Position numbers and translations under genes: made by a program
The notes under the pieces: model-generated
Database searches by the model: none
What the model saw: only the letters and a program-made list of their open reading frames with translations
Told to the model about the DNA's origin: nothing
Shown here: piece after piece, positions 1-23,580 of the stretch
How the letters are laid out: every line of letters starts with the position of its first letter
Position numbering within the stretch: the first letter of the stretch is position 1
Assembly: GCA_965202585.1 (NCBI GenBank)
Contig: OZ241827.1
Span: forward strand, 25,048,001-25,112,000
Length of the DNA stretch: 64,000 bases
Reading direction: 5' to 3'
DNA from: Thalia democratica
Lineage: Eukaryota

Positions 1-3000
1 TGCAGCGACGAGTGCGACGCGCCGCTGGTCGAAATCAGCTGCAGCAAGGTGAGCATCCGCCAGTCGGTGAACAGCGACGCCCCGCCGCACTTGCGGGAGG
101 CGGTGAGGAGGCAGCAGGGGTCGGTGACCTTCAAGTTTCACTGCGACTATTTCAACAGGTCTGTCTGCAATTGTTTTTTTTTATTTATTTTGTGAGTTTT
201 TTTTAAAGATTACAAAGGTTATTTAATTGGTTAGAAACTATCTGTGATTTTTTTCTATGATGAAACGTAGAACTTTGTAAAACTTTAGCTTAAAAAAAAC
301 GAGTCAACTTTCTTGAAAAGAGTTCAAGTAAATGAGCAGATAAATTTAGCAATTATTTTAAGGACCCTGTCACTTTGGGAACCGTTCATAGAGCCTTGGA
401 GGAGCAACATAAGCTGGAAGCACGAAGAAAAAGAAAATTCCAACGACGACTGGACGTTCAAAGTTGATGCTTCTGATAAGTGAGTTTTTATTTAGTAATT
501 TAGTAAGGCTTTAAAAACTAAGTTTTATTATTGTTTTTAGAAAAATATAATTATTTATAATAATCTTCACGTGTGTTGAATGAAATAATTATGTGACTTT
601 AAAGAAATATTTAAGGTATTCTTGCTGTAATTTTAGCTTATATCAGAAAGTAACTATTTACTCCCTCTAAATTAAACATTAATTAAATTTTTGCAAACAG
701 CTTATTTAGAGTTTTAAAAAATTGATAGTTTTTGCAAATATATACATTATCCACAAACTCGAACCAGGTTCGACGTGAACATGACGTCATCGATGATGGA
801 AGTGTGCCGGATGACGCAGGAGCGATACAAGCTTCATTGTGACGTCACTGATGAGAAGCAGTCCAACGTGAGGCAGCAGTTCGTCCCGTACATGATCAGA
901 AACATGGCAGGGTGCTGCGTCTCCTTCGCGACCCAAACGTCACTCAGCGGTCTTCATAGCAACCACAAACTCACGGGTTGGTTCGAGTCTATTTTTCACT
1001 ATAATTCTGTAATTTTTGAAACCAGCTGTCTGTTGCTTTATAGTTGAGAGCTAAAAAAAAATAGTTTGAAAAACATAAACCATAGTTTTATAACAATATT
1101 TTTCAATTATTGAACTAGTTGTTAATTTTGACCTTAGTATCAAGCTTCTGGTTCTAAATTAGGCATTACGAGTTCTTTTATAAACAATTTTTAAGGTTTC
1201 ACGTAACTGAAGAGTCAATTTGGGTAAACTAAGTATTTTAATAAAGTATTAAGTTCAGTCTTGTAAGACTTATTGAACATATTTTCTTTTTACCTGTTTT
1301 AGTTTGTTTGTTTCACTATCGTAATAACTGATTTAGCATACTGTGTACTGTAGTATTGTAGCTAGTAAAACTATCAAAAGGTCACAATTAACTTGTTTAG
1401 TTTTAAGGTCATTTCGAATTTCGAGTAATTTTTACTTGTTGAAATTTTTTTGGACAGTTTTCTTACTTTATTTGTTGAACTTCAACTTTTGCTAACAGCA
1501 AAATAAAATAAAGTGTTTTTGTATATAATAGTAAACGTTTTCCTAAACTGGGTGGAGCTAGTGTAATTTTCAAAGTTGATGAAAGCCCTTTTGGCCATAA
1601 TCAATAATACAGATTAAAGAAAAAAAAGGGTTGTTTGAATAGTTGTTACTAGTTTCATGCTAGAAAAAGGCTTTTCCGAAGTTGTTTTTTTAGGGAAACC
1701 AACAAATTAACTTAAACCAATCATCAAAATAATCTGTTTACCAGGTACTTTAGTACATATTGATCAGTGAGCCGCGTATCGACCAATAGTATAGGATATT
1801 CTCATGATACTGTTAAACATTACAACATTTTATTGATGCTACGACTACAACTAACACGTAGATTTAAAAATAAGTATTCTTTTGATTGGATGTTTAAAAT
1901 TATTTTGTTATTTTACTTTTATTTTTTTTAAAATGTTTAAAAGTTAACAAATTGGTTTAGTTAAGAAATATTCTTCTTAGCTGAAATACACTCGGGGTCT
2001 TTATTTTTACTTGGGAACACTTATGAAATCAATTTTCTACTTATTCATTTTTGTGGCCTGTAAAATTGTGTAACATGTAACTAATTTTTGTGTATTTGTA
2101 TTTATACTCGTATTTTTTAGCTTGTATTAGTTTCCATTAAAATTTTATTTCAATAAATAACAGTTGAAATAAATGACTTGGAGTTATTCTTAAAATTAAA
2201 AATTCACTCGTTTGATTTAAGGCTTCGTTTTTATTAAACAGCATTTTTGGTCATTACTTTACTTGAACCGTAATAATGATTAAAACAACTTTTGCTTTAA
2301 ATTTTCATATCAATAACTATTCTTTAGGAATAAAAAAAATCTAATAACAAAATCCGAAAGAAGACAGTAATCCTTGACATTAACTTTATTCTAACAAAAA
2401 CTTGTTCTGTTTCGACGTTTTACTTTTATTTCAAACATGAGTTTGTTCTCAATTGTTCACAACAAACTCACAGGCTCGAGAGCTTCCAGCCGGCTGAAAA
2501 CTGAAAAGCAGTGGTGCGAGCTGCTGCCGGGAGACGAGAAGAGCTTCAACTACAACAGCGCGCACGAAAAACAGAGGCACAAGCGCGCAAACGTTATGGA
2601 GCTCCATCAGGTTCGTTTCGCATATTTATATGTATATAAAAATAATATTTTGTTCCTCTGGTTAAAGTGCTCCTATATACTTCTAAAAACGTTGTACGCC
2701 CTTCTAATACTCAGCCGGGCAAAAGCTGTGTCACATTAAAAAAAAAATTCTAGTTTTAAAAAATTTTTAAAAGTTCGTAATTTTTTTTACTTAACTATGT
2801 TTTAACTTTTACCAGTGAATATTTTTCAACAGATCGTAGTGAAAGCGAAAGGATGGGTGGCAGTTGAACCGGTGACCGTCAGCAAAGTTGGCACTTATTT
2901 CAGGCATGTGGTCAGAGACAACATGAACAGCAGAAGCTACCAGTAAGTTATGTTTGTATGATACCATATAATATGATTATAAAAAGTGCATTTTATTTGA

Positions 3001-6000
3001 TTTAAATGTTTCACTAGCCCGTTAATGAAGCCTAGGTCCACAATCAGTTTATTTACAAAAAATCAACAACAATTAGAACATGAGTTTTAAAAATAAAAGT
3101 TTACAAGCATTGTTTCGTCGTGCAGTTTAAACAGACACTCTGAAATGATTTAAATGATCATAGTTATTAGAAATAACATTTATAGAAAATTGGCGACTAC
3201 AGTAAAGTTAATCTTTTTATTAGTGCTAATATTTTATATATAAAGTAATTATTATGTTTTATATATATTATAAAAATAGCCTGAGTATTGCTAAAAACTA
3301 TAAATTAAAACAATTACAAAAAGCATAACAATTTTTTAAAAAATAGCATGAGCCTGCATTTCACATAAATTCAAACAAGCCTTTTTGGGAGAAAGTTTGT
3401 TATAAAAACAAATATAAAAAGCTACGTTTAAAGAAAAATAATACACTTCAGCTTTAGCAAGTTAAGATTCTCCTTAGTTAGCTTGACAATTTAAGTGTTT
3501 TAAAGTACTTATAATTAATTGTCTTTATATATGACGTCACAAAAGAAAATCACGAACGCTCGAACGCTGCACAACCGACGCGTATATAAGCGAGCTTCAT
3601 CAATGTAGTTATCGAACGGTAGTAAGCCTGCATCTGGACCGGTGGACCTTGATGTCCGTCAATCTGGGGAAGGTCTGAGACAATAACCGGTACCTATAGA
3701 CGTGACGTCCATCGCTGTAAATACTGCGATGAGGTGATTGTTACCAGTAACTTGTGTCGGTTGTTCAATCGGGAGACGCTCCTTGTTGAGCTGACGAGAA
3801 CCGAACCGACCATGAAAACGATTTGGTTGGCCTGATAAGCTCGATTTGCAGGGTGTAGAATATGATTGTAAAATCAGTGACACACCTCGATTCAGACTAC
3901 TCTACTCCCGTTCGTCCTTTTTTTTATAAAATTAATATACGTTAGGTAGAAAGAGTGTTGTTAGATACTGTTTTAAGTTAGAAAATTAAAACTTTTAACA
4001 CTTATTCAAGTGTTACTTTTTATCGAATGATTTTTTAATGATTAGTAAAGTAACATCTTATTGATATTTGTCTTCTTAATTTAGCTTAAAATATTTTAAT
4101 GTAAAAGAAATTGAAGACAAAAGCTAGTATTTTTTTAAGTTCTTATTTTCTAATAACAAAAAAAAATTTAAAAAGTCATGAAGCAATATAGTTTTACTAT
4201 AGAAATCAAGTAAAATTATTTTATACACAGCAAAACCTTTAGCAGCAAATTTCTTACTCGTCCCGTCAATAGTTTATAGAAATTTATCTTATGTTGTTTT
4301 AAAACTTGTTTTCATTGATATAAACACATCATTTTAAAAATTGTTATTCAAGAATTTTGTCCCTCACCTAACTATTTCGTATTTCTCATTCGAATGGCAA
4401 AACATTAAGCTTTTCACAATTTTAAAGAACTTTAACTAAAACTAACAAACTTACCAAACTATAATTTCAAATACTTTATCAGCTCCCAGCAAGTAATGAG
4501 AATTGTTTTCGACGTGTCGCTGGAGGGCACCAGCGCGAAGAAAATTATAACAGTCAGAAGCGCCCTGGCAATAAAATCACGGCTCAAGTTTCCTCTGGAA
4601 CTGCGGCTCGAAGGAGCTCCCAGCGTTGGTTCTCAATCGCTGCCCGTGTGAGTTTAAACATATTTTACGGTACTTATATTTTATAATAATAATTTTTAAC
4701 GGATTCAAGTAAACTGTCAAAACTAAAAAAAAATATTTATAAGCACTGTATTTCTACAATTTTAGGCCTTAAAACTTAAATATGATGAAAAAAAAAGTTT
4801 TAATAAATCTCTCAACAGTTAATACACACTTTTTTTGGTTTAATTTTTTAAAATATTTTCATTACAGCTTGATGCCAGGGGATACGCTCTACGTGCCGCT
4901 CCACTTAACATCGTCATCGATACGAGTTCGTCCCCAGAGCAACAATAACACGGGTAACTACCAGTTCAGCGGCTCCCCAATAAAATGGAACCACAAAAAC
5001 AACAACGATGTCAATTCGCCCACGAACCACGTGCAGTTTGTTAGTTGCACTTAGTTTTAAACTCTGTTCTATTGTCAGCAAATTAATAATTTATATTCTT
5101 TTTAATAATATTTTTGTTAACAATGTCAAAGTTTTAAACTATCACATCAGCAGTTGTTTACCTTTAAAGTCAATTTTAGTACGCATTAAAATCTTTTTAA
5201 CGTTTTTTTATGCATAAAAAGACCACTTTAAACCTTTTTCTTCTTACTGACAAAAATTAAAATGTAATGTAAACGTTTTTATTAAGATAAGAAAGCATTT
5301 AAAAAATAATATATGTTACCTATATACCTTAGCTATACAATAAGTAGCAGCATCTTTAATTTTTAACAATCGTTAATACTAATAAAGAATAAAAGTATAC
5401 ATTGTATTTATAATTAGTTTTTTACAGCTTAGTTAATATGTCGGTGTTGAATAACATTTAAAATGATTGCTTATATTTTTTATATGTTCGTAAACTATAA
5501 AAATAAGACGTTTAGTTTGTATACCTTTATACATGTTATTGACGAACTAAAAAATTAGATAATATAAATTTCCCCTATGCTAGTCAAGTGTTATTTTATA
5601 TTTTTATAAAGTTTAGATTCGATTGAAATAACTTTTATTATGTGCAAAATTTTAAGTTAGATAACTTGTATTTTTTAAATGTTTTACAAAATAAATTCAA
5701 TCTAGCAGATAGTAGCTTTTTATGCTCTTAATATTTTTGACTAAATTTAATTTAATTTAGGTTGATTGCCTGCCAGCAAGTACAGAAATCAACAATAGCA
5801 ATAGATTCAAGTAAGTTTATTTCGTTCACTTATATAGATTTGGTTCGAATTACACATGATTACTTGAAATTTATTATTTTAAAAACGTTAGTTTTAAAAA
5901 TAAACCTAATAAATGTTTTTTGATTTATTTTTGTTAAATATTTTTGTTAAAACATGTTATTACAAAACTTGACGATTTTTTAAAGGTTTGTGAAGACTAA

Positions 6001-9000
6001 ATTTTTTCCTTACAAACTATCTCATATAAAAACTATTATCTTTTCTTTTTTTTCTTATTTTTTTTGCAAAACCTTTTAAATGTTTTGTTTTAACTTAAAT
6101 GTTCTGATGAATTAATGTGAAACACATTAATATCTTAAAACAAACACTAAACAAGGGATAAATAGTAAGTATAATTATTTTTCTACGCACATGCTAGGCT
6201 GCTATAATACTTAAATTAGCCTCTTTCTAAATCACTTTTACATTCACCATATTTATCTATCCCTTGGTTGAAATGATAATCGCCTCCCCTTTGTTAAATA
6301 TCGCCCTTAAATAGTTAATTAGCCATTTACTTTTTATATCCCTTTACTAGTTATTACCTTATGATAGCTAAAAGGGGGCAATGTTGCCCACACAAGAAAG
6401 CTTTGAGTTATATCTTTAATTTTTTCCAGTTTTTCTGTTTCCATAAACCGTCTCAACTATCCCACCTACCGGCAAGTAGCCAAGCAACTGCTTGAAAACA
6501 ACGTCACGGGGTCCAAGTATCTCGCCGACGACCTCAGCAATCGCCATGGCAACGACCTGACCACCCAGCTTCCGGGTCACGACATCGTCATAATGCCTCC
6601 CGTCATCATCACCAACTTGCTGCCATGCGACCTTCACTATTACGTCAAAATGAACCCGAACGTTTGTTAGATTATAGTTTTTATGTAGTTGTTATAGTCC
6701 TACTATTTATTCGAAACGGTTTTAGAAAATATGTAGATATTTTCTTAACTTTTTTAAACCGTAAATAAAGTTTTAAAGTTTTCTTTGAATAAAATAAAAA
6801 AATAGCTTTTCGTCTTTTTTAGTTGTTGTTTTTTTTTAGAAACAAAGTCTTTTATAAAAAAATACTATATCCTTAACAAAAAAAAAAATTCGCTCGTCAC
6901 AGGACACCAAAATAGATGGCAAGTTGAAGGGAGGAATGGAGGCCACGCCCCACGAAGTTCACGTTCTCCCGAACTCGACGAGGAGAAACTCCGTTGGCTT
7001 GTACATCGGCTGCACGTTGGACAATTTCAAAAATCACAGAGAAATAATTGTGCCTTCAACCATAAAAGACTTTCAGGTGTTTACAATACATAAGAGAAAA
7101 AAAGAGGGTATTGTATGGTTTTAGTGTACTTATACATACAGTATTAATGATACTTTAAACCTACACTGTTATTAAGAAACCTTAATTAAATTTATACTTA
7201 ACTATACTGAATGCTAATACTAAATATTAAATAATACTCAAGGCTATTCTATATAAAACTAGGCATGAAAATGAATGAGCATATTGTATTAATAAACAAT
7301 TGCAAACAATAACAAAAATATAAAGAACATTATACTTTAGAAAATACCTTTAATGTATTCAAAACTTTTACACAAGATTTAATCAAACAGGAATATACTT
7401 TAAGAGAGTAGAAAACAAAATAAGACTTAACTACTTAGAATGTAAATATAAAATACTTATACAAAGTAAATTACTAAAAAATACTTTATATAACACAAGA
7501 AAACTATATAAAAGTCTATTCTGGAATATCATGTTTACTGCAGCAGGCTGTGGCTAGAATGCATCCTTGCTCCAACTGTTGAGAGTTTATATATGGTTGT
7601 AATTTAGTAATGCAAACTTGCATCAGTAAACTCGTGACTGCTCTTTTTTTTTATTTATCTCAACTTCCATCAATATAACTCGTAGCCTCAGCGAGCTTTC
7701 TCTTAAACGCTTGGATGAACAGGAACTTTAACTCAAAACTTTCCACTAAATTTAAACAGTTATCAAATGCAGTTTGATATCCTGTTACAGTATGAAACTC
7801 TTACCACAATACGTGTTAATTTTAGTGAAGAAAGATATACTTGTTTTCTTTTTGTTTTAAACTACTCATTATATTTGATAGTTATAAATTAAAATGTTTA
7901 TATAAAAGGTGCTCCATCTTAAGGATAAAGTTATATTTTCAATCGTTTATATACTATAATTTTAAATATTTCAGAAAAATATCAAATCAGATAACAGAAA
8001 ATATGCTATAAATTTTAGGTATGTAGTAATAAAGTTTTCCAAACAGATGAAGTTAGCGCTGAAAGACAAAAGAGGTGAGAGCCTTGTTTTGAACGCGCGA
8101 ATCAGCTGGAAGAACGATTGTTGTGTCAACATCGCTGTCATGGCTCCATACTGGATCGTTAACAAAACTGGTTTGTTTATTATATACTTACAAATTAATT
8201 ATATCTCATAAACGTTTTTTATCTTAAGTTTTTGTAGTTCACAATTACTAAGTATCTACAAGCTGTTACAGACAATAATTATTAAAGTATCACTTAAATA
8301 TAAATAATTTGGTAATTGAAAAAAATATTTTTACTACAAAAAAGCTACTGCTCGAATTCTTATGTATTTTAATCTAGTTAGATTATTCTAGTAACATTGA
8401 TTTTAACTTAAAGATATATTTAGATATATTTTAAACATGTTGATATTTTATTTTCAAGAATAATATTTTTTTTTAATTTTCACATTGATAGATAAATATT
8501 TCCATTTTAGTACGATTTGGGTTCACTGCATTAAAGATAGTTATATTATGTCTATTAAACCATTATCAATTATTATTAAGTAAAGAATGTTTGTAGGTAG
8601 AGTCTTTATAAACAATTATATATATTTCAAACCATAAGTAAAGTAACTGTATTGTTTAAAATATTTTATTATACAGCAAAATTTTCAACTGCAATACTTA
8701 CGAACTTCTCATTTTAGGACTGCCGATAATAATGAAGCAGGATGGCTGTGAGAAACCTGCCGCTGGCCAGTTCACCGCTCACGAGCAAGCCAGATCGCTC
8801 GAACCTCTGTTGTTTTCGTATGCTAACAGGTACTTGGGTTATAATTTCCTGCAGCAGCTTTGATGCATATTGCTGCTTTGATGTGTTTGTTGCGAATGTT
8901 TATGCTTATTGGCTTTTATGATTGTGAAATTTTGTAAGTAATAAAACACTAAGGAGATTGTTTTCGAATCAAACTTTGAAAACTTATAACAGTGTTTAAT

Positions 9001-12000
9001 TTTCTGCGGGTGATAATGTAAACTTAGCTAATGTAATATCTAAATTGTGTTTCTTTGTTGATAAGTAATGCTAAGTACATACATCGATATCAGTTTAACT
9101 GAAAATTTGTTACTTTTTTATGAATAAACGCCTTATAATTTAATGTGTGCAGAAATTTTACTTGAATTGTTTCGTTTTTTTTTTTTTTGAAGTATGAGAA
9201 TTACTGATAAAGACATATGCTAATATAAAAAGGTGCAAGTTTTGAAAAAAAAAACACTTTCTTTATAATCTTTTTTTCTTGGAATTTATTATTAAAACTA
9301 ATTTTCATTAATTTGCTTAAATTTTCAGGGACAACTCTTACTTGTGCACGATGAGGCTGGGCAAAAACGCCAAATTCGACCAGCTGGACAACTTTCCCTC
9401 CCCAAAAACTTCTGCTTCCATGGCAACGCACGCGTCGTCATCCAGCGAAAGTTCTACAAAACTGAGACCCTGCTACTGTGAGAGTTTTTCCACGGACGGC
9501 GGTACTTGTACAAGAAACTTGAAACTGGTTTGTTGCTTGTTATGTTAAAATATTGATGCTAAAGGTATTATTTATGTTTAAACTAAAATAAGATTATTAT
9601 TGATAGTTTATGTGTAAGATAGTAAAAGATAGTTAAAAAGAATTTAATTTTCAAGTCTACAAGCTTTAAACATAAAATCAGATTTCCGGGGACCGTTCTC
9701 CGAACAGGGAGTTTTGCACGGGTATCAGCGTGCGAAGGGGTGTGGGTCAGTACCAGCACACCCATATAGTTACCATAGCACCCAGGTTCCTGCTGGTCAA
9801 CAAGACAAGCCGGCACAAGCTCAACTTCGCCCAACGACACACTATATCCTACACGAGCGACGCACAAGGAAACAACTACCACCTCTCGATAATACCCGGT
9901 TCGAACATACTTTTGACTAATTACTATAAACATGTTTTTATTTTTATCTTTTTAACTTTTGGTCTAATGTTAACAATAAGTAAATTCACAGCTCAACAGA
10001 TACTAATTCAAATTAATTCTACTCAGGCTCTGCAACATTAAAATTTTCAATTAATAAGACTAAAATTACAACATACAAACCATAAAGATCTGTTAGTAAG
10101 AACAGAGTAGATTGCGCCTTAACATAATGCAATTTTTTCCAGGTTCATCAGTAGTGTTCCATTGGCCGAGAGTGGACTTGGACACGTTGTTGTGCGTCAA
10201 ACTGGCAGACGTGGATGATTGTCATTGGAGCGGGGGTTTTGTAATTGACCGGGTCAACGCTTTTCACATTCCGCTCAGGATAGCCAGCGGTTTCTACAAT
10301 AGAAGTTCGCAAGGTTTTTGTTAGATTCTACGAGAGACTCAATTTTTTTATGTAGAAGAATAACCTATCATAAGCTTGTTCTGTAGTAAAAATTTTTGAG
10401 ATTATTTCATAAATAAATTTTATTTTTAGTGTGATAAAATCAATAAACCTTATGTTTAAAGTTTTCAAACTAAGTCATAGTTTTAGTCATATTTAGAAAT
10501 AGTAAGTCTTGTAGTTAGTTCTAAACTATTCTGTGATTGTATTTGAAAAACTTTATGTACATAAATAATAGCTTGCTGAACTGAAGATCTTGTGTATAAG
10601 AGTGTTTTGATTTGTTTAAGTAATATCTTAGTTGTTAGAAATTTATTTCAAATTTAATAGAACTGCACCCGCAGTCACCTCACTGCATTTTCTTGAGTGT
10701 CGAAGTGACGCTTTCCGAAGCAACGTATTACGTCACAATAAGCGATGCAGATCCGAAGCTCATACCTCCGCCGCTGAGAATTGACAACTTGTCTGCCGCC
10801 ACAGTCATTTATAAGCAAGTAAGTATCAAAATACTAATTTGGGTTTGTAAATTGTTTTTAACTTTTTTGTAAAATAATCTCAAATAATAATGGAACTGAT
10901 TACAAATCTTTTACAATCTTTTATTTCCTCATCCCTGTTTCTTCTTCGGTTTTCAATAAAAGTTTTTTTTTACACTTTGCACAATAAATTTTTCCATAGC
11001 ATATGGTTGTATGCAAACTTGTATGATCGCAGGTGGGAACGGACGACATGTACAACACGGAAGTTCACGCAGACAACAAACTCGCATTTGCCTGTGACGA
11101 ACCGTGCAAGCCTGAACTCGTGCAGTGCACTGTTAAAGGTAAAAATTTAATTTGATAATGTATTGACAATGTTAATCGAAAGATGTAGTTAAATTATAAG
11201 CTAGGTTTAAAAAATTGATGACGTAGGTTTTTTACGTTTTTTACGTAGAGTAGTTAGGTATTTGACCATAGAAAATGTTAAGTATTTCTAAATAGTAAAG
11301 TTTTTCAAAGTACACTCTGTACGGCTCAAGTAATTTTAAAAAATTATATAACTGAAACTAGCTAGTTTAGTTTATATTTGTGATCAAATAAACGTTTTAT
11401 TTTTTAAATTTAAAAACTTAATTGAATTTTAGGTGGATCAATGTCAGTGATAGTGGACATGAAGCAAATAGGACTGGAAAAGCAACTTTGCTACGAAAAC
11501 TTCATATACATTGCCATTGGACCGCCTCAGCAATGCATCACACGTAAGAAAACATTTTTGTTATAAAACTTCTCTGCTAAAGTTATTATATATTTTTGAT
11601 CTACTTTGATCATCAGACCGCATCCTTCAGTATACTGAGCCCCAGGTTTCGTTTTTGTTGAAAATATTAAGTTGCAACCGGAAAAGCTTTTAATCTTCAA
11701 TATACAATTTATGTTAACTTGAGCTTATCTCACGGCACACGAAAGTAAAGGCTTTGGCTCTGACAAGCTTTCGCCGATTTTGTCTTTGCATAATATACTT
11801 TGCATAATTTTTAAGTTGTGTTTAAATTTTATATACCTGTTTTCTGGGCATCTATTGAAAAAATATAGTGAACGTTTATAAGAAATTACTTTTGGAACTT
11901 TCATTAAACTTTAATATTTGCAGGCAGCCGAAGTCGGGTGAGCGCGGATCCGCAGCGCCTCGTTATCGACGTCGACCAATCAGATCCGTTTAAACTCAGA

Positions 12001-15000
12001 TTGCAGCCACTCAGGGAAGGGAAGAGGAGCCAGCTGTGGCGGATGACCTCAGACGGGAAGTTGTACCACGAAGGAAGCTCGTCACCGGGTGGCGGCAGAG
12101 AGACATCAAAAAGAAGCGGTTATTACGGCGGAAACCAACCTGGTACTTGATTTTGATCAGTTATTAACGAAAAAAATAGAAAGTTTATAAGGGAGGGTTT
12201 TTTTTCTGTCAGAAACTTTTTTTACTTTCATACGTAATTCGTTTCAAATAAATTTATCGTCAGGATTTTTTTTTTGGAAAATTAAAATGGCAGCAATGTT
12301 TTAAATGAATAAACAAAAAGGTTTGATCATATTATAACTTGAGCTTGTCTCTAGGCATATGTAAGTCCAGGCTCTGTTAGACTAAAACCGATGTTTTCTT
12401 GAAACAAATAAATGAATGACTAGTATGCACGAGTATAAAATGATATTAAAAAGTTGTATAACTGAAAGAAAAATGTTTTGTTTCAGGTCTGGTTCTGGAC
12501 ATTGGAGAGCTCGGTTTTGTAAAAGACGAGGGGGTTCCCTTGATTCTCGCTCAGCACGACACCAGAAGACTCCCAACTCAGACGTGGAAGTTTCAACAAG
12601 GGGGATTTCTGACCTGCAAGAAGAAGGGGCTCTGCGTTCAGGTGCTTTCAAATAAACTACTAGGACCGTTTTTTTATCCAATCAATATTAATTCTCGTTC
12701 AACTGAAATTAAAAAATAATAATAATAAGAGAAAATATTGAAAAAAATTACAAAACAAATTTTGCAGGTGCCTAAATTGGAAGTTGGCGCCGAGCCGAGG
12801 CTGATGCAGTGGCAACAACACGACCTGCCCGCCCGCCAGTGCTGCTCCCTCAAAATGATCCCCGGCAGCGGAGTGCTGTCGCTGAAAATTACCAGAGACG
12901 GACCGACCAGAGTCCTTCAAATTCGCGATATAAGGTTGAATCTACTTTTTTTTTCAATGCAAGACCAAAAAAAAAAAAAAAAATTGAGTGATTATATATT
13001 TAAGTAAACCCACTAAGTTGCTTATATTATTAGCTCATGCAATTAGCTGCTGTTATTTTTGTTATATAAACAAACCTGCGTTTTGTTGAGCTTTGAAATG
13101 TATCTATATATTTTAGAAAACGATCAGGATAACTTTGACATTGTTAAAACTCCACAGGCAGCAGAGGTCGGAGTCGCAGAAGCTGCTGAAGCAGGCGGTG
13201 AGCGCCACCGAGGAAAGGAGGAACCTGATCAGGAGGAGCTCCAAGGAGAAGATGGAGAAGCAGACGAGGCTGCACGTGAACGTGTCGCTGTACAAGGGGA
13301 TCGGGGTGTCGCTGGTCAACTCCAACCCCGAGGAGCTGCTCTATGCCAGCCTGTGCGGCGTCAACATGAACCTGACGCTGGGAAGAGACGAGCAGAACGT
13401 CCTACTCAGAATACAGAAAGTTCAGGTTAACTATTGTAGTCGTAATTAACTGTAATGTGTATTATACAGGGTTGCCACTCGGTCAGGAAAAGTCAGGAAA
13501 TCAGGAAAAGTCAGGAAAAAATGGGGGTTTTGAAAAAAAGTCAGGAAATTTGATAAAATTTCAAAATAGTCAGATTTTTTCAGTTTAAATTTACAAAATT
13601 CCTTGTTTTCCAAAGTCTTCAAATGGTAAAAATTAATTAAAAGTCCTTTAAAGTCAGAAAACAATTCTAAAATTTTCCTAGAAATTTACAAAAATATTTA
13701 ATTTTATTTCCAATGCCTTCACCTGGTATAAATTAGTAAAATATCCTTTATAAACCTGCAAAAATTTTCTATTAACATATTGAACAGGTACCCTACTTGA
13801 ACAAGCAGATTTTGTTAGCTTTTTAGTATTGATGATCTGTAGCAAGGACACTTCCATAGTGAAACTGTGATATATACACAAAAGATTATCTAGCATAATT
13901 TTAGAATTAAAGTGTTTTTTGTTTAAATAATTGAGTTCTTTATAACTAAGCAGTTAGTTTAGTATTTTATGTAACGAGTTAATGTGTATACTTTACCTCT
14001 TTATAATTTTTTTAAAGTTGTTTAAATTTATAAATTAAGTTATAAGAGAGGTATATGCTAAGGTTAAGTTTACTTATTGTTTGTTTTTTTTGTAGAGTAA
14101 CTTAAGTTTTTAAAGTAAATAAGAGTATATTTATTTGTTACAAATTTTATACTAAATGATAAGAGGAAGTATTTTATACAACAGATATATAGTTTACTTT
14201 TTTATGTTTTTTTTTACAGTTACTTAAGTATATTCTTTTTTAATTGATTCTTAATTTAAGGATTTTATAACAAAAAGTTTGGGTAGTATTTTATTAAACT
14301 AAGTGAACAATTTATATAAGTAAAACTGATTTAGAAAAGTCTGGAAAATTTTGGTAAAAAGTCAGGAAAAGTCAGGAAATTTTTCTCAGCTTGATCAGTG
14401 GCAACCATGATTATAGTATTAAAAAAATTTAGTTGTTTATGATAAATTTGCTCAGCAGTTATGATGTTTGTTCATTTTATTAAGTTTGAAAATATACGTG
14501 TATTAAAAGGTACTGTAGGATCAAAAGTTCTTTTTTTATCTTGCTTAATAAGTTCTAGGATTTTACTAAAAGCACAAATTTAACAAAGCATATTTAGTTT
14601 TTTATTTATATCATAAATATTAAACATTTATGTTTTTAAAAGATCTGTGTAAACTAAAATAGAATTAATAAAAAAAGGTGGACAACCAACTTTTGGGCGG
14701 TAAACCAGTCGTATTAATCCACCCGACGACCGACAGCGGGGTGGTGACGTCACAATCGACTTCCATCGACCCGCAGTACCACGACGACGATTCTCCCAAC
14801 TCAGTTTCGCAACCCTTCATTCAGATTCACGCGGTCAGGCAGACTTCTACTTCATCGCTGTTGGTTGAAATTGTGGTTAAATTTATTGCTACGGTCAAAC
14901 TTTTTTTAAAAATACTTGAAAAAAATTTGTGTTTTACAACAACAACTGTTAAGTTAACAACTGTTTTTTAAAGTTTAAAAGTTCTTATTTTAAATCCATT

Positions 15001-18000
15001 TTTTTATACCTGTAATTAACGGAAGCCTAGATAACCTATGTATACATCTTGATAGTATTAAAAGAATAAATCAAATAGTTTTAAACAAAACAATTATTTA
15101 GCATTATTGATTGATGAAGGTACGAATTGTTCAAGACGGTGACGATAAAACTTGAGGAGGCGAACGTCCAGATGGAAGAAAGACTTTTGTTGAAAATACT
15201 TCAATTTGTCGGCTACACGTCAAAAGACGACGGCAATAATGACCAATTGAACTACGACGACAAAGTTCATTTGTTTTATTTTTTCTAGACTTAAAGTTGA
15301 TTTTTTATAAACTAATAATAATACTAAAGTTATTAAACGTTCATATTTTTATTTGACCGAAAACATTAACGTTATACTATCTTCAAAATTGTGTTTTTTG
15401 AAACTATTATAAAATTCCAGTTTAAATGAAACACTTTTAAAAGTTAATTTTTTAGCAACTCCAAATAGTTACGGCAAATCATTAGTTGCAATGAGAACCT
15501 TATTTCAAACATTAAACTTTTGTTTAGTAACATTTCAATATTAATTCAAGTTGGATTTGTACCGGGTGGCCAACATGGATGCCAACCAGTTTGGGGGAAA
15601 CCCGGACGCCAACGGCGACGTCAGGAAGCGCTACTACTTCGACGGCTTGAACGTCATAATTTCCCCCAAGCTGAAACTGGGCTTCGTCACGTGCCCGATG
15701 GAGCAGCTGGAGCAGGAGTTGAGGGACGTCAGGTCTCTGTTTCCTTTCTCCTTCGTGCAGTTTCAGAACGCACCGATCAGGATCGACGCTTACCGGAGGA
15801 GCCACATGTTCGAGACAGCCGAGTTTCTGTCGGGCGACTTCAAAAAAGTTCGTTCGATAAGTTGATTGATTTTTTTTTTTCTTTTTGAAATGAAGGTTTT
15901 CCATATCTAGTTTTTCTTTGTTGCAAACAAAGATAAATTATTTTTGTTTTTGTCTAATACAAGTTTTTTTTGTCTTTAAAAAAAAAGTTGATTTAGTACA
16001 AGAATATTCACAGCACATGGTCGACCAAGTGTTGAGCCAGGTGTTCAAAATATTCTTCTCGTTCGATTGTCTCGGCAACCCGATCGGAATTGCCACCGAC
16101 GTCAAGGCGGGGATCACAAACCTGGCCAGCGGCAACATTCCCGAGATGCTGTTGAATTTCTCACACGGACTCTCAAACTCAACCGCTAAGGTTTTTTTTA
16201 ACTAATTGTTTGTAGAAAATTTTAAAAGCTAGTATGATAGCTGGTGTTTAAAAAAAAGTTGATAGTGTTTGTGAAAAGTAATTGAGTTTGTAATTTTATA
16301 TTTTTGTACTCTTATTTTGCTTAATTTTTTCTACAAAGTTTACAAAAACCTTTTACTTCCGTTGAGTTTATGCTACAAAAAAAAACTGTTTTACAACCAG
16401 CAAGTCTTGTATGTATTTACAGAAAATAATGTTTATTTATAACAAAATCAAACTTTACTTATAAACAGTTTTTACAAAAGTATTTCGAATCAGTGCTGCC
16501 TACTAAACGTTTTGCTTAAAGAAATATTTTAAACACAAGCGAAATGCCAGGTGGTGGGAACGTTGTCGAACGGCATGGGCAGGATTGTGATGGACGAAGA
16601 TTACGGGAACAAGAGGAGGGCAATCCAGGCCAACGCTGGAAATTCCGCGGGTGGGCATGTTATCGCCGGATTGCAGGTTTGTTTTTGAACTTTAACTCAA
16701 CTCAACTAACAAGTTTCGATTAGTTTCAACGCGTAAAATAAACTACTTTTAGCTTAAACTTAAGTCTCTTGATTTGTTTTTGAATTATTATATCTACCAC
16801 ATATTTGTTAAATTATTTTTTTTTAGATTTAACTTATAACTGAAGAGCCATAGAGAGCAAATTATAGTTTTGTCTAATTTAGTGAAATGCGTCTCCTTGT
16901 ATGTTCAATTTAGAACTAAACCTAAATTATTAGTGTCTAGTTCAAAAAAATACTTACAATTATTTAAAATAAAAAATAGATGGTTTGACCTCATAGTTTC
17001 TTATTAGGTGACAAACTTTTAAAGTTTTCAAATACTTGTTACTAGGGATTGATGGCTGGGGTGATGGGAGGCCTCACCAGCGTCATAACTCAACCGGTGA
17101 AAGGGGCCCAGTCCGGAGGGGCGAGCGGATTTTTCAAGGGAATCGGCAAGGGCATCATAGGAACGGTTGCCAAGCCGATAACAGGAGTGCTCGACTTCGC
17201 GTCCAATTCGGCCTCGGCGGTCAGAGACCTGTCCATACAAGACGATGCCCTGGTCGAGAGGATGCGCCTCATCAGGTGTTGCCATGGCTTCCAGGTATCA
17301 CCTATTTTGGAGTTATAGTTTTCAACTTGATGTAATGAATAAAAAATAGTTTGTATAGCAAATTTAAAACTCGTATATATCAATAACAAAATATACGATA
17401 AGTATATTTTAATGTTGATTAGTGTAGTGTGAGTATTAGAGTAGTTTGTTTCAAAATAGAAATATTTCTAAAGTTTGACTTGGCAAAAGATTAGTCTTTG
17501 TTTAATTTTATTAAAAAATAATTAGAAAACAATATTTAATCAGGGTTGCTTGCAAGCGTACTCTCACTCAGAGAGCAGGGGTCAGCAAATATTGTACCAG
17601 ATAAACCACAATAATTACAGGGAGCATTTCTACAGCCTCACTGAAATTGGTGCGCCTGGAACAGCCGGAATAATTGTAAGTTACAGAAAAAATATTTATT
17701 TTAGCTTTTTTAATACCTCACAGATGAAAATTTTAAGACTAAGCTATAATTTTCACATACAATTTTTTTTTGAAGAATTTAACCAACATCAAATTAGAAT
17801 TAATTCAGCATATAATTTTTGTTATAGAACAACGTACGTCACAATTTTTTAAACATAACCAAGGTTCTTTATATTGTTGGTAAAAGATAAGTGAGTGTTT
17901 GGATATTAATAAATAAAAATTAATTTAGTATACAATAAAAACATCTGCCTGCATTTAAATGTGACTTAACCAGAAATGCATTTCCAAACCCCAAAACAGG

Positions 18001-18756
18001 TGATAACCACCAAGCAGCAGGTTTACATAGTGAAGGCGAATCACCGTGACAACAACCAATCGGTGGACGCCGACAACATTCTGCTCATAATCCCCTACAC
18101 CGATCTCATCAGGGTGAGCGTGGTTGCCGAGGAGGAACAGAGGGAGGTGTCGGCCGGAGGAAGGAGAAACGAAATTTATTACGTCGAATTTCATTTCGTT
18201 GTTTGTTGCTCTTTCATTGATTTAGATGTAGAAGAAGTATTAAAACTTATTTTAAGTTTTTGGAAAGTTATTTAATTTGTGTACTTCACTAAACGAGTTC
18301 TGCCTTCTGTATTTTTTTAAAACTGTAAACTTTTTCCTAGTGCAACAAAATATACGATTGTACTTTTTAAAGAATTCAGGACCAAATTTTTTTTTTTGAT
18401 TTACTCCGTCACATAAACATAATTCTTTCAAATTTGAAATTAAAACTTCATGTTTGAATTTCAAAATATTAACTTGATGTTTCCAGGATCAGGACTCGGC
18501 GGGCGGCGTCAGGTACGCGAGCAGCCACCAGGTTGAGGAGAGCTTCGTGTCGGCGCTGCGATCGACCACCGTCTTCACCTCGCCCCAGTACCGCTCGCAT
18601 CAGGGGCTGTCCCCCCATCAAAACCCCCAGGTGAACGAGCAGAACGTGAAGAAGCCGCGGGTGAGGTGCAGCACGCTGCAGGTGGCGGAAGCGGTCAGCA
18701 GGAAGGTCGACTTCGCCAAGACGCTGCTGCTGGATCAGAGGGAAACGCTTCTGTGA
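1..18756 (+). CDS. VPS13D: Vacuolar protein sorting 13D (bridge-like lipid transfer protein), 3' part; 5' end lies outside the window
   Basis: Manually spliced GT-AG exons keep a single open frame: 1-158, 363-479, 768-976, 2474-2610, 2833-2942, 4483-4647, 4868-5039, 5761-5810, 6430-6661, 6903-7076, 8047-8170, 8718-8829, 9329-9527, 9682-9898, 10143-10313, 10661-10818, 11033-11138, 11433-11543, 11924-12142, 12487-12641, 12768-12934, 13158-13425, 14678-14859, 15120-15264, 15551-15847, 16014-16190, 16551-16676, 17046-17294, 17544-17675, 18000-~18200, 18487-18756 (TGA). The peptides match VPS13D motifs in the correct order: DYFNRTLSLWEPFIEPW, VGTYFR, KKIITVRSAL, APYWIVNKTGLP, FTAHEQARSLEPLLFSY, PGSSVVFHWPR, CYENFIYIA, EGKRSQLWRMTSDG, GSGVLSLKITRDGPTRVLQI, VDNQL, MEERLLLKIL, LGNPIG, GIGKGIIGTVAKPITGVLDFAS. 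Confidence 0.95.
3532..3590 (+). promoter_or_regulatory. Putative type 3 Pol III promoter of the RNase P RNA
   Basis: TATATAA at 3583-3589 lies about 28 nt upstream of the P1 5' strand. A CGAACGCT direct repeat at ~3553-3568 occupies the expected PSE position, and a CRE palindrome TGACGTCA sits at 3532-3539. Confidence 0.7.
3611..3920 (+). ncRNA. RPPH1: RNase P RNA (H1 RNA) inside VPS13D intron 2943-4482, same strand as the host gene
   Basis: CR-I GGGAAGGTCTGAGAC lies at 3667-3681 and CR-V ATTCAGACTACTCT at 3890-3903; together they form the P4 pseudoknot (GTCTGA/TCAGAC). P1 pairs CGAACGGTAGTA (3613-3624) with TACTCCCGTTCG (3903-3914), one mismatch. P2 pairs CCTGCA (3627-3632) with TGCAGG (3847-3852). 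Also present: CR-IV-like AGCTCGAT, CR-III-like TGAAA, a CATCGC/GCGATG stem and a TGATT-GTAA-AATCA GNRA hairpin. The CR-I sequence is RNase P-type rather than MRP-type. Confidence 0.93.
3918..3925 (+). terminator. Pol III oligo-T terminator of the RNase P RNA
   Basis: A run of 8 T immediately follows the P1 3' strand (TTCGTCC-TTTTTTTT). Confidence 0.75.
7660..7794 (-). mobile_element. Possible decayed Penelope-like GIY-YIG C-terminal fragment in VPS13D intron 7077-8046
   Basis: The minus frame reads HTVTGYQTAFDNCLNLVESFELKFLFIQAFKRKLAEATSYIDGS*. This resembles the H..TGH..FDN..IL..E....RKL.EA..I tail of Penelope-type endonucleases and sits in a GC-richer patch of an AT-rich intron. Confidence 0.4.
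13467..14409. mobile_element. Non-autonomous DNA transposon (MITE-like, 943 bp) in VPS13D intron 13426-14677
   Basis: Terminal inverted repeats CAGGGTTGCCACT (13467-13479) and AGTGGCAACCATG (14397-14409) match at 12/13 positions. The direct repeat ATTATA flanks both sides (13461-13466, 14410-14415). Subterminal GTCAGGAAA repeats occur near both ends. No transposase ORF is present. Confidence 0.85.
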
Positions 18757-20299
18757 CGTCATAGTTGACGGAGTTTGGTTTGGCGTGGGAGTCGGGGCGA
18801 GAATTTTACACGGAAAGCTGCATATTTTTTACTTTTTTCTTTTCGTTTTGTCGGTAGCTTTTTTGTTCGTCATTTTTTAGGAAAGTTGATTTTTTTTGCG
18901 AAGCTTTTTTCGTGCAGTCGATTTTTTGATGTTTCTTTTCGTTTGAAGCCTAACAATCTTAATTTTTATTTTAATATTTTTACTTTTATTGACTGCACCT
19001 TTGAGTGTATACTATGCTAACTATATTATGCATAATTTAAGCTTAATAATACTTTTAAACTAATACTTACACTCGTTTAAGATTTATTTTCGATTTAAGT
19101 TTTATTACACTACCTATGTAATAATTTGTTTCCTGTGATTTTATTTTACACTCGTTGTTTTAAACAAAGACAACAAATTGATTCTTAGGCTTGAAAGATT
19201 TTATCTAAAAGTTTTTGTTGAGGTTAACATATTTGAAAAACTAACAAAAACCTTAACTAAAAGTAATCACACAAACTAGGCTTTTTTTTAAATTAATGAT
19301 AAGAAATAAATCTTGACGGTCTACGTAATTTTGGAATAACTTTTGTTTTCAATCCTCTAAGGTAAAACTTAATGAAATAATTAATTTTTATATACTACCA
19401 AGTACGAAAAATTTTGAAAATTTAATTGAACATTTATTGTAAAAAAGTTAGTTGCTTTGCACAAATTTGTTTTAAAGGTTAAAACTTGATGCCGCACGCC
19501 AGAGGCTTCTGCTTGACAGGCTAGTTCGTACATTGCCGTTCCTATGATTGTGTTCTAGTTAAAAGTTACTGTATGTAAGATGAACACTTTCGATCTTGAA
19601 TTTTTATTAAAGATCAAGAGTGGACAACATACGTTAGACTTAAAATTCCTATCCGTGCACAACTCCAACTTTAAAAAAAAATCTTATTTGGTTCTTTTTA
19701 TTTTACTGTTACCCCTTACCTTTGGTCGGTAAGCGGTTCTCGGATTTGATCGCGGGTTGAAACTGAGCGGTTCCCACAACATACGGCATGCGAATAAATT
19801 TTTAAAGATAAAAAATAGTAGTAAACATAGGTATGAATTTTAAAAATATTATATTAACTAAAATGTGGTAATAGTTCCATTGTTTAAATTTTATGCGAGA
19901 CATATCAGTAAAATTTTAGAAACGACAACAAAGGAAAATATTACACTTGAGTTAATAAAAAAATCTGTTTTTATTCACTATAATGCTTTTGAATAATAAG
20001 CCCTACAAGTTACAATGATTAAAACTATTAATAATCAAAAAAAATATTTGCTTTAATTAGTACAAAACTGAAATAATAACTACCATTTATTTAAAATTCT
20101 TAGTCATAGTTATTAAGTTGGTGTTCATTAATCAAAAATAAGTTACCCAACAAATATCTTCGAGAGAAAAAAATACAAAAATATTTGTTCATTTCCTAAG
20201 AAATGCCATTAATATTTAGAACACTTTAATACGAATATAATAGCAAGCTATGAATGTCATCAAAATTAAGTGAATGTTTTTTAAGTTCTAATCTATAAT

Positions 20300-23137: not shown

Positions 23138-23580
23138 NNNNNNNNNNNNNNNNNNNNNNNNNNNNNNNNNNNNNNNNNNNNNNNNNNNNNNNNNNNNNNN
23201 NNNNNNNNNNNNNNNNNNNNNNNNNNNNNNNNNNNNNNNNNNNNNNNNNNNNNNNNNNNNNNNNNNNNNNNNNNNNNNNNNNNNNNNNNNNNNNNNNNNN
23301 NNNNNNNNNNNNNNNNNNNNNNNNNNNNNNNNNNNNNNNNNNNNNNNNNNNNNNNNNNNNNNNNNNNNNNNNNNNNNNNNNNNNNNNNNNNNNNNNNNNN
23401 NNNNNNNNNNNNNNNNNNNNNNNNNNNNNNNNNNNNNNNNNNNNNNNNNNNNNNNNNNNNNNNNNNNNNNNNNNNNNNNNNNNNNNNNNNNNNNNNNNNN
23501 NNNNNNNNNNNNNNNNNNNNNNNNNNNNNNNNNNNNNNNNNNNNNNNNNNNNNNNNNNNNNNNNNNNNNNNNNNNNNNNN
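23138..23580. other. Assembly gap (443 N)
   Basis: Run of N. The two X-filled ORFs in the track are artefacts of this gap. Confidence 0.99.

What the first reader, a model, noticed from the sequence alone, without database searches (positions are those of the whole stretch)
3532..3925. Self-contained RNase P RNA gene on the sense strand of a VPS13D intron
Seen: a complete RNase P RNA (CR-I, CR-V, P1, P2, P4) inside intron 2943-4482 of VPS13D, on the same strand as the host, with TATA at about -28 and a T8 tract at the 3' end. Established: vertebrate H1 RNA is a stand-alone type 3 Pol III gene, whereas in insects and crustaceans the RNA is embedded in introns of Pol II host genes and lacks Pol III signals. 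Inference: this locus combines both arrangements, being intronic and sense-oriented yet keeping Pol III signals. It could be an independent, chordate-side intermediate in a Pol III to Pol II handover, or it could be produced both by Pol III and by intron processing. Automated annotation would probably miss it.
Basis: partly seen in the sequence, partly recalled or inferred. Interest (0 to 1): 0.8.

Follow-up and report, generated by a model that had tools for sequence, protein, structure and literature searches.

The report
RNase P RNA gene inside intron
A complete gene for the RNA part of the tRNA-trimming enzyme RNase P sits, with its own start and stop signals, inside a spacer (intron) of the VPS13D gene of a marine planktonic animal; this is most likely an ordinary self-driven small-RNA gene that merely lies within another gene.

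Summary
Rfam finds one full-length nuclear RNase P RNA at 3616-3911 (+), at 67 bits and E 5e-17. A spliced metatranscriptome contig and a catalogued transcript protein both join 2942 to 4483, so intron 2943-4482 is real and the RNA lies in sense inside it. The host is a VPS13 gene, and a ricin-type lectin exon points to VPS13D.

The RNA gene looks self-sufficient:
- A GC island (3532-3917) stands in a 23% GC intron.
- It starts at a TGACGTCA octamer.
- It has TATATAA 29 nt before helix P1 and T8 3 nt after it.
- It has no internal T4.

Canonical RNase P genes fetched from metagenomes show the same TATA and T-run geometry. Two marine RNA libraries hold contigs of the RNA part only, not the rest of the intron.

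The simplest reading is an autonomous Pol III (type 3) gene nested in an intron. A centipede precedent exists, there in antisense. Nothing here supports a Pol III-to-Pol II handover or dual biogenesis, though neither is excluded. DNA runs show about 1.7-1.9 times the depth over the RNA gene, plus an alternative upstream contig, so a second copy may exist. Standard Rfam annotation would not miss this gene. Interest is modest.

The parts
2830..2942 (+). Host (VPS13D-like) exon upstream of the RNA-bearing intron
   Evidence: Spliced metatranscriptome contig X9 record 18. P0011 reads ...NSRSYH|SQQV... across the junction.
2943..4482 (+). Host intron, 1,540 nt, with GT..AG ends. About 23% GC outside the RNA unit.
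   Evidence: Joint from 2942 to 4483, 'skips 1540, GT..AG'. GC values.
3532..3539 (+). Palindromic CRE-like octamer TGACGTCA at about -81. It marks the 5' edge of the GC island and is a candidate upstream activator element.
   Evidence: Function is inferred. Other agents' notes report CRE-like sites in small-RNA promoters of this genome, which was not tested here.
3550..3568 (+). Candidate proximal sequence element: TCA + tandem CGAACGCT CGAACGCT, at about -63 to -45. The same CGAACG heptamer core starts the RNA.
   Evidence: Sequence and motif positions. Its placement relative to TATA resembles a PSE. No species consensus was available, so this is inference.
3584..3590 (+). TATA box TATATAA, 29 nt before the first base of P1, flanked by GC-rich sequence.
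   Evidence: The chance of a TATA in this slot is 2-6.5%. Nine of the 13 environmental RNase P genes have a TATA-like motif in this slot.
3613..3917 (+). RNase P RNA, about 305 nt. The Rfam match covers 3616-3911; P1 pairs 3613-3619 with 3908-3914. The start is probably A3611 to C3613.
   Evidence: No T4+ run inside the gene. RNA-library contigs cover 3642-3865 and 3644-3836.
3918..3925 (+). T8 tract, the Pol III terminator, 3 nt after P1.
   Evidence: P(T8 within 8 nt) is at most 1%. 10 of 13 environmental RNase P genes have T4+ 2-8 nt after the model end.
4483..4647 (+). Host exon downstream of the intron, at the start of the VAB domain.
   Evidence: record 18. Weak Pfam VPS13_VAB hit. P0011.

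Best explanation
Window 3532-3925 is a self-contained transcription unit for the nuclear RNase P RNA, the catalytic RNA that trims tRNA 5' leaders. It has the layout of a type 3 (upstream-promoter) RNA polymerase III gene. An upstream octamer (TGACGTCA) and a GC-rich block stand where a proximal element would be. A TATA box lies 29 nt before the RNA, and a T8 terminator lies 3 nt after its closing helix.

The unit is nested, in the same orientation as the host, in the middle of a 1.5-kb intron of a VPS13D-like gene, and that intron is normally spliced out. The RNA is most likely made by Pol III from its own promoter with near-mature ends. The intronic position is incidental, a nested gene.

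Shown: identity and integrity of the RNA, the signals and their spacing, the splicing of the host intron, and presence of the RNA part alone in RNA libraries. Inferred: which polymerase is used, the exact ends of the RNA, and the role of the octamer and the GC-rich block.
For: - RF00009 full-length hit at 67.4 bits, with CR-I and CR-V intact.
- P1 forms in the minimum-energy fold and as a 12-nt inverted repeat.
- A GC island of 44-49% spans exactly 3532-3917 in a 23% GC intron. Non-intronic composition therefore extends 80 nt upstream of the RNA.
- TATA and T8 sit in the canonical slots, with individual chance probabilities of 2-6.5% and at most 1%.
- There is no internal T4+ on the sense strand, while A4 occurs twice.
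- Calibration on 13 environmental RF00009 genes: 9 have a TATA-like motif at -31 to -37 and 10 have T4+ at +2 to +8. The window gene has TATA at -33/-31 and T8 at +6. The two loci lacking both signals have internal T runs.
- The criteria of PMC4287351 for Pol III RPR genes (TATA 21-27 nt upstream, poly-T at the 3' end) are met.
- RNA-library contigs cover only the RNA part of the intron, while the host mRNA contig skips the whole intron.
Against: - No direct evidence shows which polymerase makes the RNA. RNA contigs are internal (3642-3865 and 3644-3836), so the ends are unmapped.
- RNA libraries may contain DNA. Absence of intron flanks argues against that, but depth is low (4.6-14).
- The PSE cannot be validated without U6/7SK/MRP promoters of this species.
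- The Rfam score (67 bits) is well below the 112-180 bits of the environmental genes. That fits a fast-evolving lineage but also some decay.
- The window copy carries three variants (3683, 3684, 3713) seen in none of the four runs.
- Depth of about 1.7-1.9x suggests another copy that could be the main source of the RNA.
Confidence: 0.75

Rival explanations
1. Dual or transitional biogenesis. The RNA is made both by Pol III from its own promoter and from the host pre-mRNA intron. In the second route RNase P proteins protect it and Xrn2/exosome trim it, as in Drosophila. The locus would then be a natural early stage of a Pol III to Pol II switch.
For: - The RNA is in sense orientation inside a spliced, expressed intron. 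Every host pre-mRNA therefore contains a full RPR.
- The trimming nucleases and RNase P proteins are ancient and promiscuous (PMC6797745). The same authors postulate a transition period with both kinds of allele.
- A possible second copy would fit a two-allele stage.
Against: - No read or contig links intron flank to the RNA in RNA libraries.
- Intact, well-placed Pol III signals make an extra route unnecessary.
- Sense orientation has a prior of one half.
- Nested Pol III genes are common and are not usually taken as transitional.
Confidence: 0.1
2. Redundant or decaying duplicate. The functional RNase P RNA gene lies elsewhere, and the intronic unit is a DNA-level duplicate (promoter to terminator) that is weakly expressed or silent.
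For: - In both DNA runs the contig over the RNA gene has depth 115-123, against 57-75 for the flanking exon and intron contigs.
- Contigs break at 3618 or 3541 and at 3915, which are the unit's edges.
- In X3 a 787-nt contig enters at 3530-3570 from a different upstream sequence.
- The window copy has three private variants, and RNA contigs carry the other alleles.
- The Rfam score is low compared with the environmental genes.
Against: - The private variants are structurally harmless: 3713 C/T keeps the pair (C-G versus U-G), and 3683/3684 lie in a joining region.
- All core elements, P1, TATA and T8 are intact.
- The runs come from other individuals or populations, so allele differences do not assign expression to a locus.
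- Depth from contigs is a poor copy-number measure, as the tool itself warns.
- Contig breaks could be heterozygous SNP or T-length bubbles.
Confidence: 0.12
3. Purely intron-derived RNA of the insect/crustacean type. The TATA, T8 and upstream block are coincidental, and expression depends on the VPS13D promoter.
For: The RNA is intronic and in sense. AT-rich introns are full of TATA-like and T-rich strings, with 12 TATAWA in the 1.1 kb of flanking intron.
Against: - The TATA lies inside a GC-rich block, not in AT-rich intron sequence.
- The joint chance of both signals in the right slots is of the order of 1e-3 or less.
- Two RF00009 loci lack both signals and carry internal T runs (L094, L023; that they are the embedded type is my guess). 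The window gene differs from them on all three counts.
Confidence: 0.03

Closest known systems
Canonical animal RNase P RNA genes (e.g. human RPPH1/H1): type 3 Pol III genes
   Same: Upstream promoter with TATA about 25-30 nt before the RNA. T-run terminator directly after P1. No internal T4. Same RNA architecture (P1, P2, P3, P4 with CR-I/CR-V, P7-P12) by Rfam alignment.
   Different: This gene lies inside an intron of a protein-coding gene, in sense, rather than between genes. The upstream elements here are a CRE-like octamer and a CGAACGCT tandem, not the vertebrate Oct/Staf DSE and PSE consensus (the vertebrate elements are from my own knowledge). The PSE is unverified.
Strigamia maritima (centipede) RNase P RNA gene
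   Same: It is intronic yet keeps the typical Pol III signals PSE, TATA and poly-T (PMC4287351).
   Different: The centipede gene is antisense to its host. Here the RNA is in sense, so the host pre-mRNA contains it.
Insect and crustacean embedded RNase P RNA (Drosophila RPR in ATPsynC intron)
   Same: The RNA sits in sense orientation in an intron of a Pol II gene, and the host is expressed and spliced.
   Different: Those genes lack a PSE, a positioned TATA and a fixed poly-T. They depend on the host promoter and on Xrn2/exosome trimming (PMC4287351, PMC6797745). The window gene has all the signals. The host gene also differs (VPS13D).

Membership tests
Nuclear RNase P RNA (Rfam RF00009) | Covariance-model score above the curated gathering threshold over the full model | tested here: met
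   67.4 bits against a gathering score of 28, E 4.7e-17, model positions 1-301/301. This is lower than 13 environmental genes at 112-180 bits.
Nuclear RNase P RNA (Rfam RF00009) | Conserved P4 core: CR-I GGGAAGGUCUGAGA and CR-V AUUCAGACUACUCU | tested here: met
   Both are identical to the consensus in the cmscan alignment.
Nuclear RNase P RNA (Rfam RF00009) | Closing helix P1 joining the 5' and 3' ends | tested here: met
   3613-3624 pairs with 3903-3914, 12 nt at 92% complementarity. The helix is present in the MFE and centroid folds.
Nuclear RNase P RNA (Rfam RF00009) | Expressed as a stable RNA that is part of active RNase P | tested here: inconclusive
   Two metatranscriptome runs hold contigs of the RNA part only, at 97% identity and depth 4.6-14. 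Ends, locus of origin and enzyme association are not testable here.
Type 3 (upstream-promoter) Pol III gene | TATA box about 21-30 nt upstream of the RNA start | tested here: met
   TATATAA at 3584-3590, with 22 nt between its end and P1. Nine of the 13 environmental RF00009 genes have a TATA-like motif in this slot.
Type 3 (upstream-promoter) Pol III gene | Proximal sequence element matching the species' U6/7SK/MRP consensus | tested here: inconclusive
   A GC-rich block at -63 to -45 with tandem CGAACGCT is in the right place. No other small-RNA gene of this species was available. Other agents' notes on this genome's snRNA promoters could not be checked.
Type 3 (upstream-promoter) Pol III gene | Run of at least 4 T right after the RNA and none inside it | tested here: met
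   T8 at 3918-3925, and no T4+ in 3613-3917.
Type 3 (upstream-promoter) Pol III gene | Transcription depends on Pol III | not testable with these tools
   Needs inhibitor, ChIP or reporter experiments.
Intron-embedded, Pol II-dependent RNase P RNA (insect/crustacean type) | Located in sense in an intron of a Pol II gene | tested here: met
   Intron 2943-4482 is spliced, and host and RNA are both on the + strand.
Intron-embedded, Pol II-dependent RNase P RNA (insect/crustacean type) | Lacks signals for independent Pol III transcription | tested here: not met
   TATA and T8 are correctly placed, and the GC island extends upstream.
Intron-embedded, Pol II-dependent RNase P RNA (insect/crustacean type) | Expression depends on the host promoter, with ends made by exonuclease trimming | not testable with these tools
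   No end-resolved RNA data were available.
VPS13D (host gene) | VPS13 family with a VAB domain and a conserved C-terminal region | tested here: met
   Pfam VPS13_VAB on exons at 6407-6667, 9730-10041 and 10100-10321 (E 1e-7 to 1e-8), and weakly at 4484-4651. PDB VPS13A/C at E 1e-16 for exon 17046-17315.
VPS13D (host gene) | [quoted passage not shown] | tested here: inconclusive
   Exon 11908-12147 hits Pfam Ricin_B_lectin at E 0.028, below the cutoff. Atlas nearest clusters are ricin lectins. QLW and QTW motifs are visible, and the position after VAB profile 396-485 fits.
VPS13D (host gene) | UBA domain | not tested
   It would lie upstream of the window's start.

The most novel reading that the evidence does not exclude
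This sense-oriented intronic RNase P RNA gene still has a working Pol III promoter, yet part of the mature RNA is also salvaged from the VPS13D intron. It would then be a living example, outside arthropods, of the two-route stage postulated for the origin of the insect/crustacean intronic RNase P RNA. It might coexist with a second, non-intronic copy.
Probability: 0.1. Interest if true: 0.65.

Novelty: new member of a known kind. Interest (0 to 1): 0.3.

Why it matters
[quoted passage not shown] How that switch began is unknown. A sense-oriented intronic copy that still carries Pol III signals is the arrangement from which such a switch could start. This locus, and a possible second copy, therefore offer a natural system to ask whether intron-derived RNase P RNA arises as soon as the gene sits in sense in an intron.

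On present evidence it is simply a correctly annotated nested Pol III gene. It is useful for annotating this genome and for defining its small-RNA promoter elements (octamer, GC-rich block, TATA). It is not a surprise to a specialist.

Tried and rejected
1. Orthologous loci in relatives:
- Three protein homologue searches used ORFs around the RNA: exon 4869-5051, the antisense ORF 3662-3883 and ORF 2437-2736. They gave nothing usable except the transcript protein P0011, which has no contig on record.
- Four exact-ORF look-ups found nothing.
- Tara Oceans contigs of a related species (L001-L005) cover only window 12.5-19.3 kb.

2. JGI metagenome scans:
- The specific 21-mer had no hit.
- The CR-I 16-mer gave 120 loci, all distant, none with VPS13D exons. 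They served only as a calibration set.

3. The whole-library phmmer search with exon 15548-15862 returned only short fragments, so no full-length VPS13D reference was obtained for a gene model.

4. Atlas and Pfam on P0011 were uninformative.

5. There are no flanking direct repeats that look like a target-site duplication, only AT-rich chance matches. Retroposition is also unlikely because the non-transcribed promoter is present.

6. The bacterial-type promoter/terminator scan is irrelevant here.

7. No other small-RNA gene is in the window for deriving a PSE consensus.

8. I could not test the lineage ('tunicate') independently.

Full report
**What is there.** A scan of the whole window against Rfam gives a single match, nuclear RNase P RNA (RF00009). 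It lies at 3616-3911 on the + strand and covers the full model (1-301/301) at 67.4 bits against a gathering score of 28, E 4.7e-17. Nothing else appears even at E<=0.5. In the alignment the two strands of the catalytic P4 helix, CR-I (GGGAAGGUCUGAGA) and CR-V (AUUCAGACUACUCU), are identical to the consensus. The closing helix P1 is longer than the model. CGAACGG at 3613-3619 pairs with CCGUUCG at 3908-3914, seen as a 12-nt inverted repeat and in both the minimum-energy and centroid folds. The RNA is therefore about 305 nt, roughly 3611/3613 to 3917.

**Host gene and intron.** Exons on the + strand from 1 to about 18.8 kb belong to a VPS13 gene.
- Pfam VPS13_VAB hits four exons.
- The exon at 17046-17315 matches solved VPS13A and VPS13C at E 1e-16 to 1e-15.
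- Exon 11908-12147 is ricin-lectin-like (Pfam E 0.028, and the nearest Atlas clusters are all ricin-type lectins).
- It lies just after the part of the VAB domain that matches profile positions 396-485.
- A ricin-type lectin inserted in the last VAB repeat is the feature that marks VPS13D (PMC7613979).

The intron is proven twice. A 971-nt contig of a marine metatranscriptome run (X9) joins 2607|2830, 2942|4483 (GT..AG, skipping 1,540 nt) and 4647|4869. A catalogued marine transcript protein (P0011, 98% identical) reads ...NSRSYH|SQQVMRIVFDVSLEGT across the same junction.

**Signals for independent transcription.** The 1.5-kb intron has 23% GC. A block of 44-49% GC runs from 3532 to 3917, starting 80 nt before the RNA and ending at its 3' end. 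The elements are as follows.
- **Octamer:** the block opens with the palindrome TGACGTCA at 3532-3539.
- **Candidate proximal element:** TCA plus a tandem CGAACGCT CGAACGCT follows at about -63 to -45.
- **TATA:** TATATAA lies at 3584-3590, set in GC-rich sequence. That is 29 nt (start) or 22 nt (end) before P1.
- **Terminator:** T8 at 3918-3925 follows P1 after 3 nt.
- **Internal T runs:** there is no T4+ run inside the RNA on the sense strand, though A4 occurs twice.

Measured on this window, a TATAWA in the right 7-nt slot has probability 2-6.5%. A T5+ within 8 nt has 5-7.5%, and a T8 at most 1%.

**Calibration against other RNase P genes.** I fetched environmental contigs holding the CR-I core and confirmed 13 full-length RF00009 genes among them. 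Nine have a TATA-like motif 31-37 nt before the model start, and ten have T4+ 2-8 nt after the model end. Two (L094, L023) have neither signal and carry internal T runs, so they may be the embedded type. The window gene (TATA at -33/-31, T8 at +6, no internal T4) belongs with the canonical group. It also meets the criteria used by Manivannan et al. for Pol III-type RPR genes (PMC4287351). Whether the GC-rich block is the species' PSE could not be tested, because no other small-RNA gene is in the window. Other agents' notes say that snRNA-type promoters of this genome combine a CRE-like site and a TATA box. That is a lead, not evidence.

**Expression.** Two marine metatranscriptome runs each hold one contig that covers only the RNA part of the intron: 3642-3865 at depth 4.6, and 3644-3836 at depth 14. 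Both are about 97% identical to the window. The rest of the intron has zero depth, and the host mRNA contig in X9 has depth 11.8. This fits a stable RNA. However, the contigs are internal, so they say nothing about the ends, the polymerase or the locus of origin.

**Copy number (unresolved).** Two runs labelled as two different organisms (X1, X3) cover exons and introns alike, so they are DNA. They carry the same intron context at 98-99% identity. Several features suggest a second copy.
- In both runs the contig over the RNA gene has depth 115-123, while the flanking exon and intron contigs have 57-75.
- The contigs break at the unit's edges: 3618 or 3541 on the left and 3915 on the right.
- In X3 a 787-nt contig enters at 3530-3570 from a different upstream sequence.

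The simplest reading is a second, near-identical copy of the promoter-to-terminator unit elsewhere in the genome. Heterozygous bubbles are the alternative, and the tool warns that contig depth is a poor copy-number measure.

All four runs differ from the window at 3683, 3684 and 3713. These changes are harmless to the structure: one lies in a joining region, and the other turns C-G into U-G.

**Lineage.** The locus and a related species (introns about 76%, exons 85-91% identical) occur in Tara Oceans metagenomes. The organism is therefore a marine planktonic animal. Several follow-up notes on the same genome call it a pelagic tunicate. I could not test this.

**Interpretation.** The best-supported explanation is an autonomous type 3 Pol III gene for RNase P RNA that is nested in an intron (confidence about 0.75). 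It is permitted by the sense orientation and by the promiscuity of the trimming machinery described for Drosophila (PMC6797745), but no observation here supports it. An intronic RPR with Pol III signals is already known in the centipede Strigamia, in antisense (PMC4287351), and orientation is a coin toss. A possible second copy raises the chance that this one is redundant. The claim that automated annotation would miss the gene is wrong, since Rfam/Infernal finds it easily.

**Verdict.** This is a new member of a known kind, of modest interest. It is worth a genome-wide copy count and an end-mapping experiment, because a sense-intronic RPR with Pol III signals is the starting arrangement postulated for the arthropod switch.

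Noticed in passing
window 3541-3915 (read laying): In two DNA runs the contig over the RNase P RNA unit has 1.7-1.9 times the depth of the flanking VPS13D contigs. In X3 a 787-nt contig joins at 3530-3570 from another upstream context. This may be a second genomic copy of the promoter-to-terminator unit.
   Followed up: partly
window 3553-3568 and 3613-3618: The heptamer core CGAACG occurs three times on the + strand within 66 nt. It appears twice as the tandem CGAACGCT in the putative promoter and once as the first bases of P1. CGAACGCT occurs only once elsewhere in the 64 kb. The meaning is unknown; it could be a PSE or a remnant of 5'-end duplication.
   Followed up: partly
window 782, 840, 3532, 14745, 18754, 53029: The palindrome TGACGTCA occurs 6 times against 0.45 expected from shuffles. 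Four of the other five (782, 840, 14745, 53029) lie in GC-rich, stop-free coding-like stretches and 18754 in a GC-rich segment at the host gene's 3' end, so codon or composition effects are likely.
   Followed up: no
L094:509-831(-) and L023:3634-3955(-): These two environmental RF00009 genes (141 and 122 bits) lack a TATA and a 3' T-run and contain internal T4+ runs. They look like the intron-embedded pancrustacean type.
   Followed up: no
L104:424-2451(-): One environmental contig carries RNase MRP RNA, RNase P RNA and a U1 snRNA on the same strand within about 2 kb. This is a tight small-RNA gene cluster.
   Followed up: no
window 12480-19296 vs L001/L002: Tara Oceans contigs come from a related species, with introns about 76% and exons 85-91% identical. 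The window's intron 13432-14434 is about 1 kb longer than in the relative.
   Followed up: partly
window 61359-62140 (+): A Mu-class glutathione S-transferase gene lies here, in two ORF pieces with GST_N and GST_C_3 domains.
   Followed up: partly
window 23138-23580: A run of 443 N (assembly gap or masked stretch), left untouched.
   Followed up: no
window 2608-2829 and 4648-4868: The two introns next to the RNA-bearing one are only about 220 nt, against 1,540 nt for the RNA-bearing intron. For the second, the contig shows one extra letter at the joint and GT..GC ends, so its exact acceptor was not resolved.
   Followed up: no
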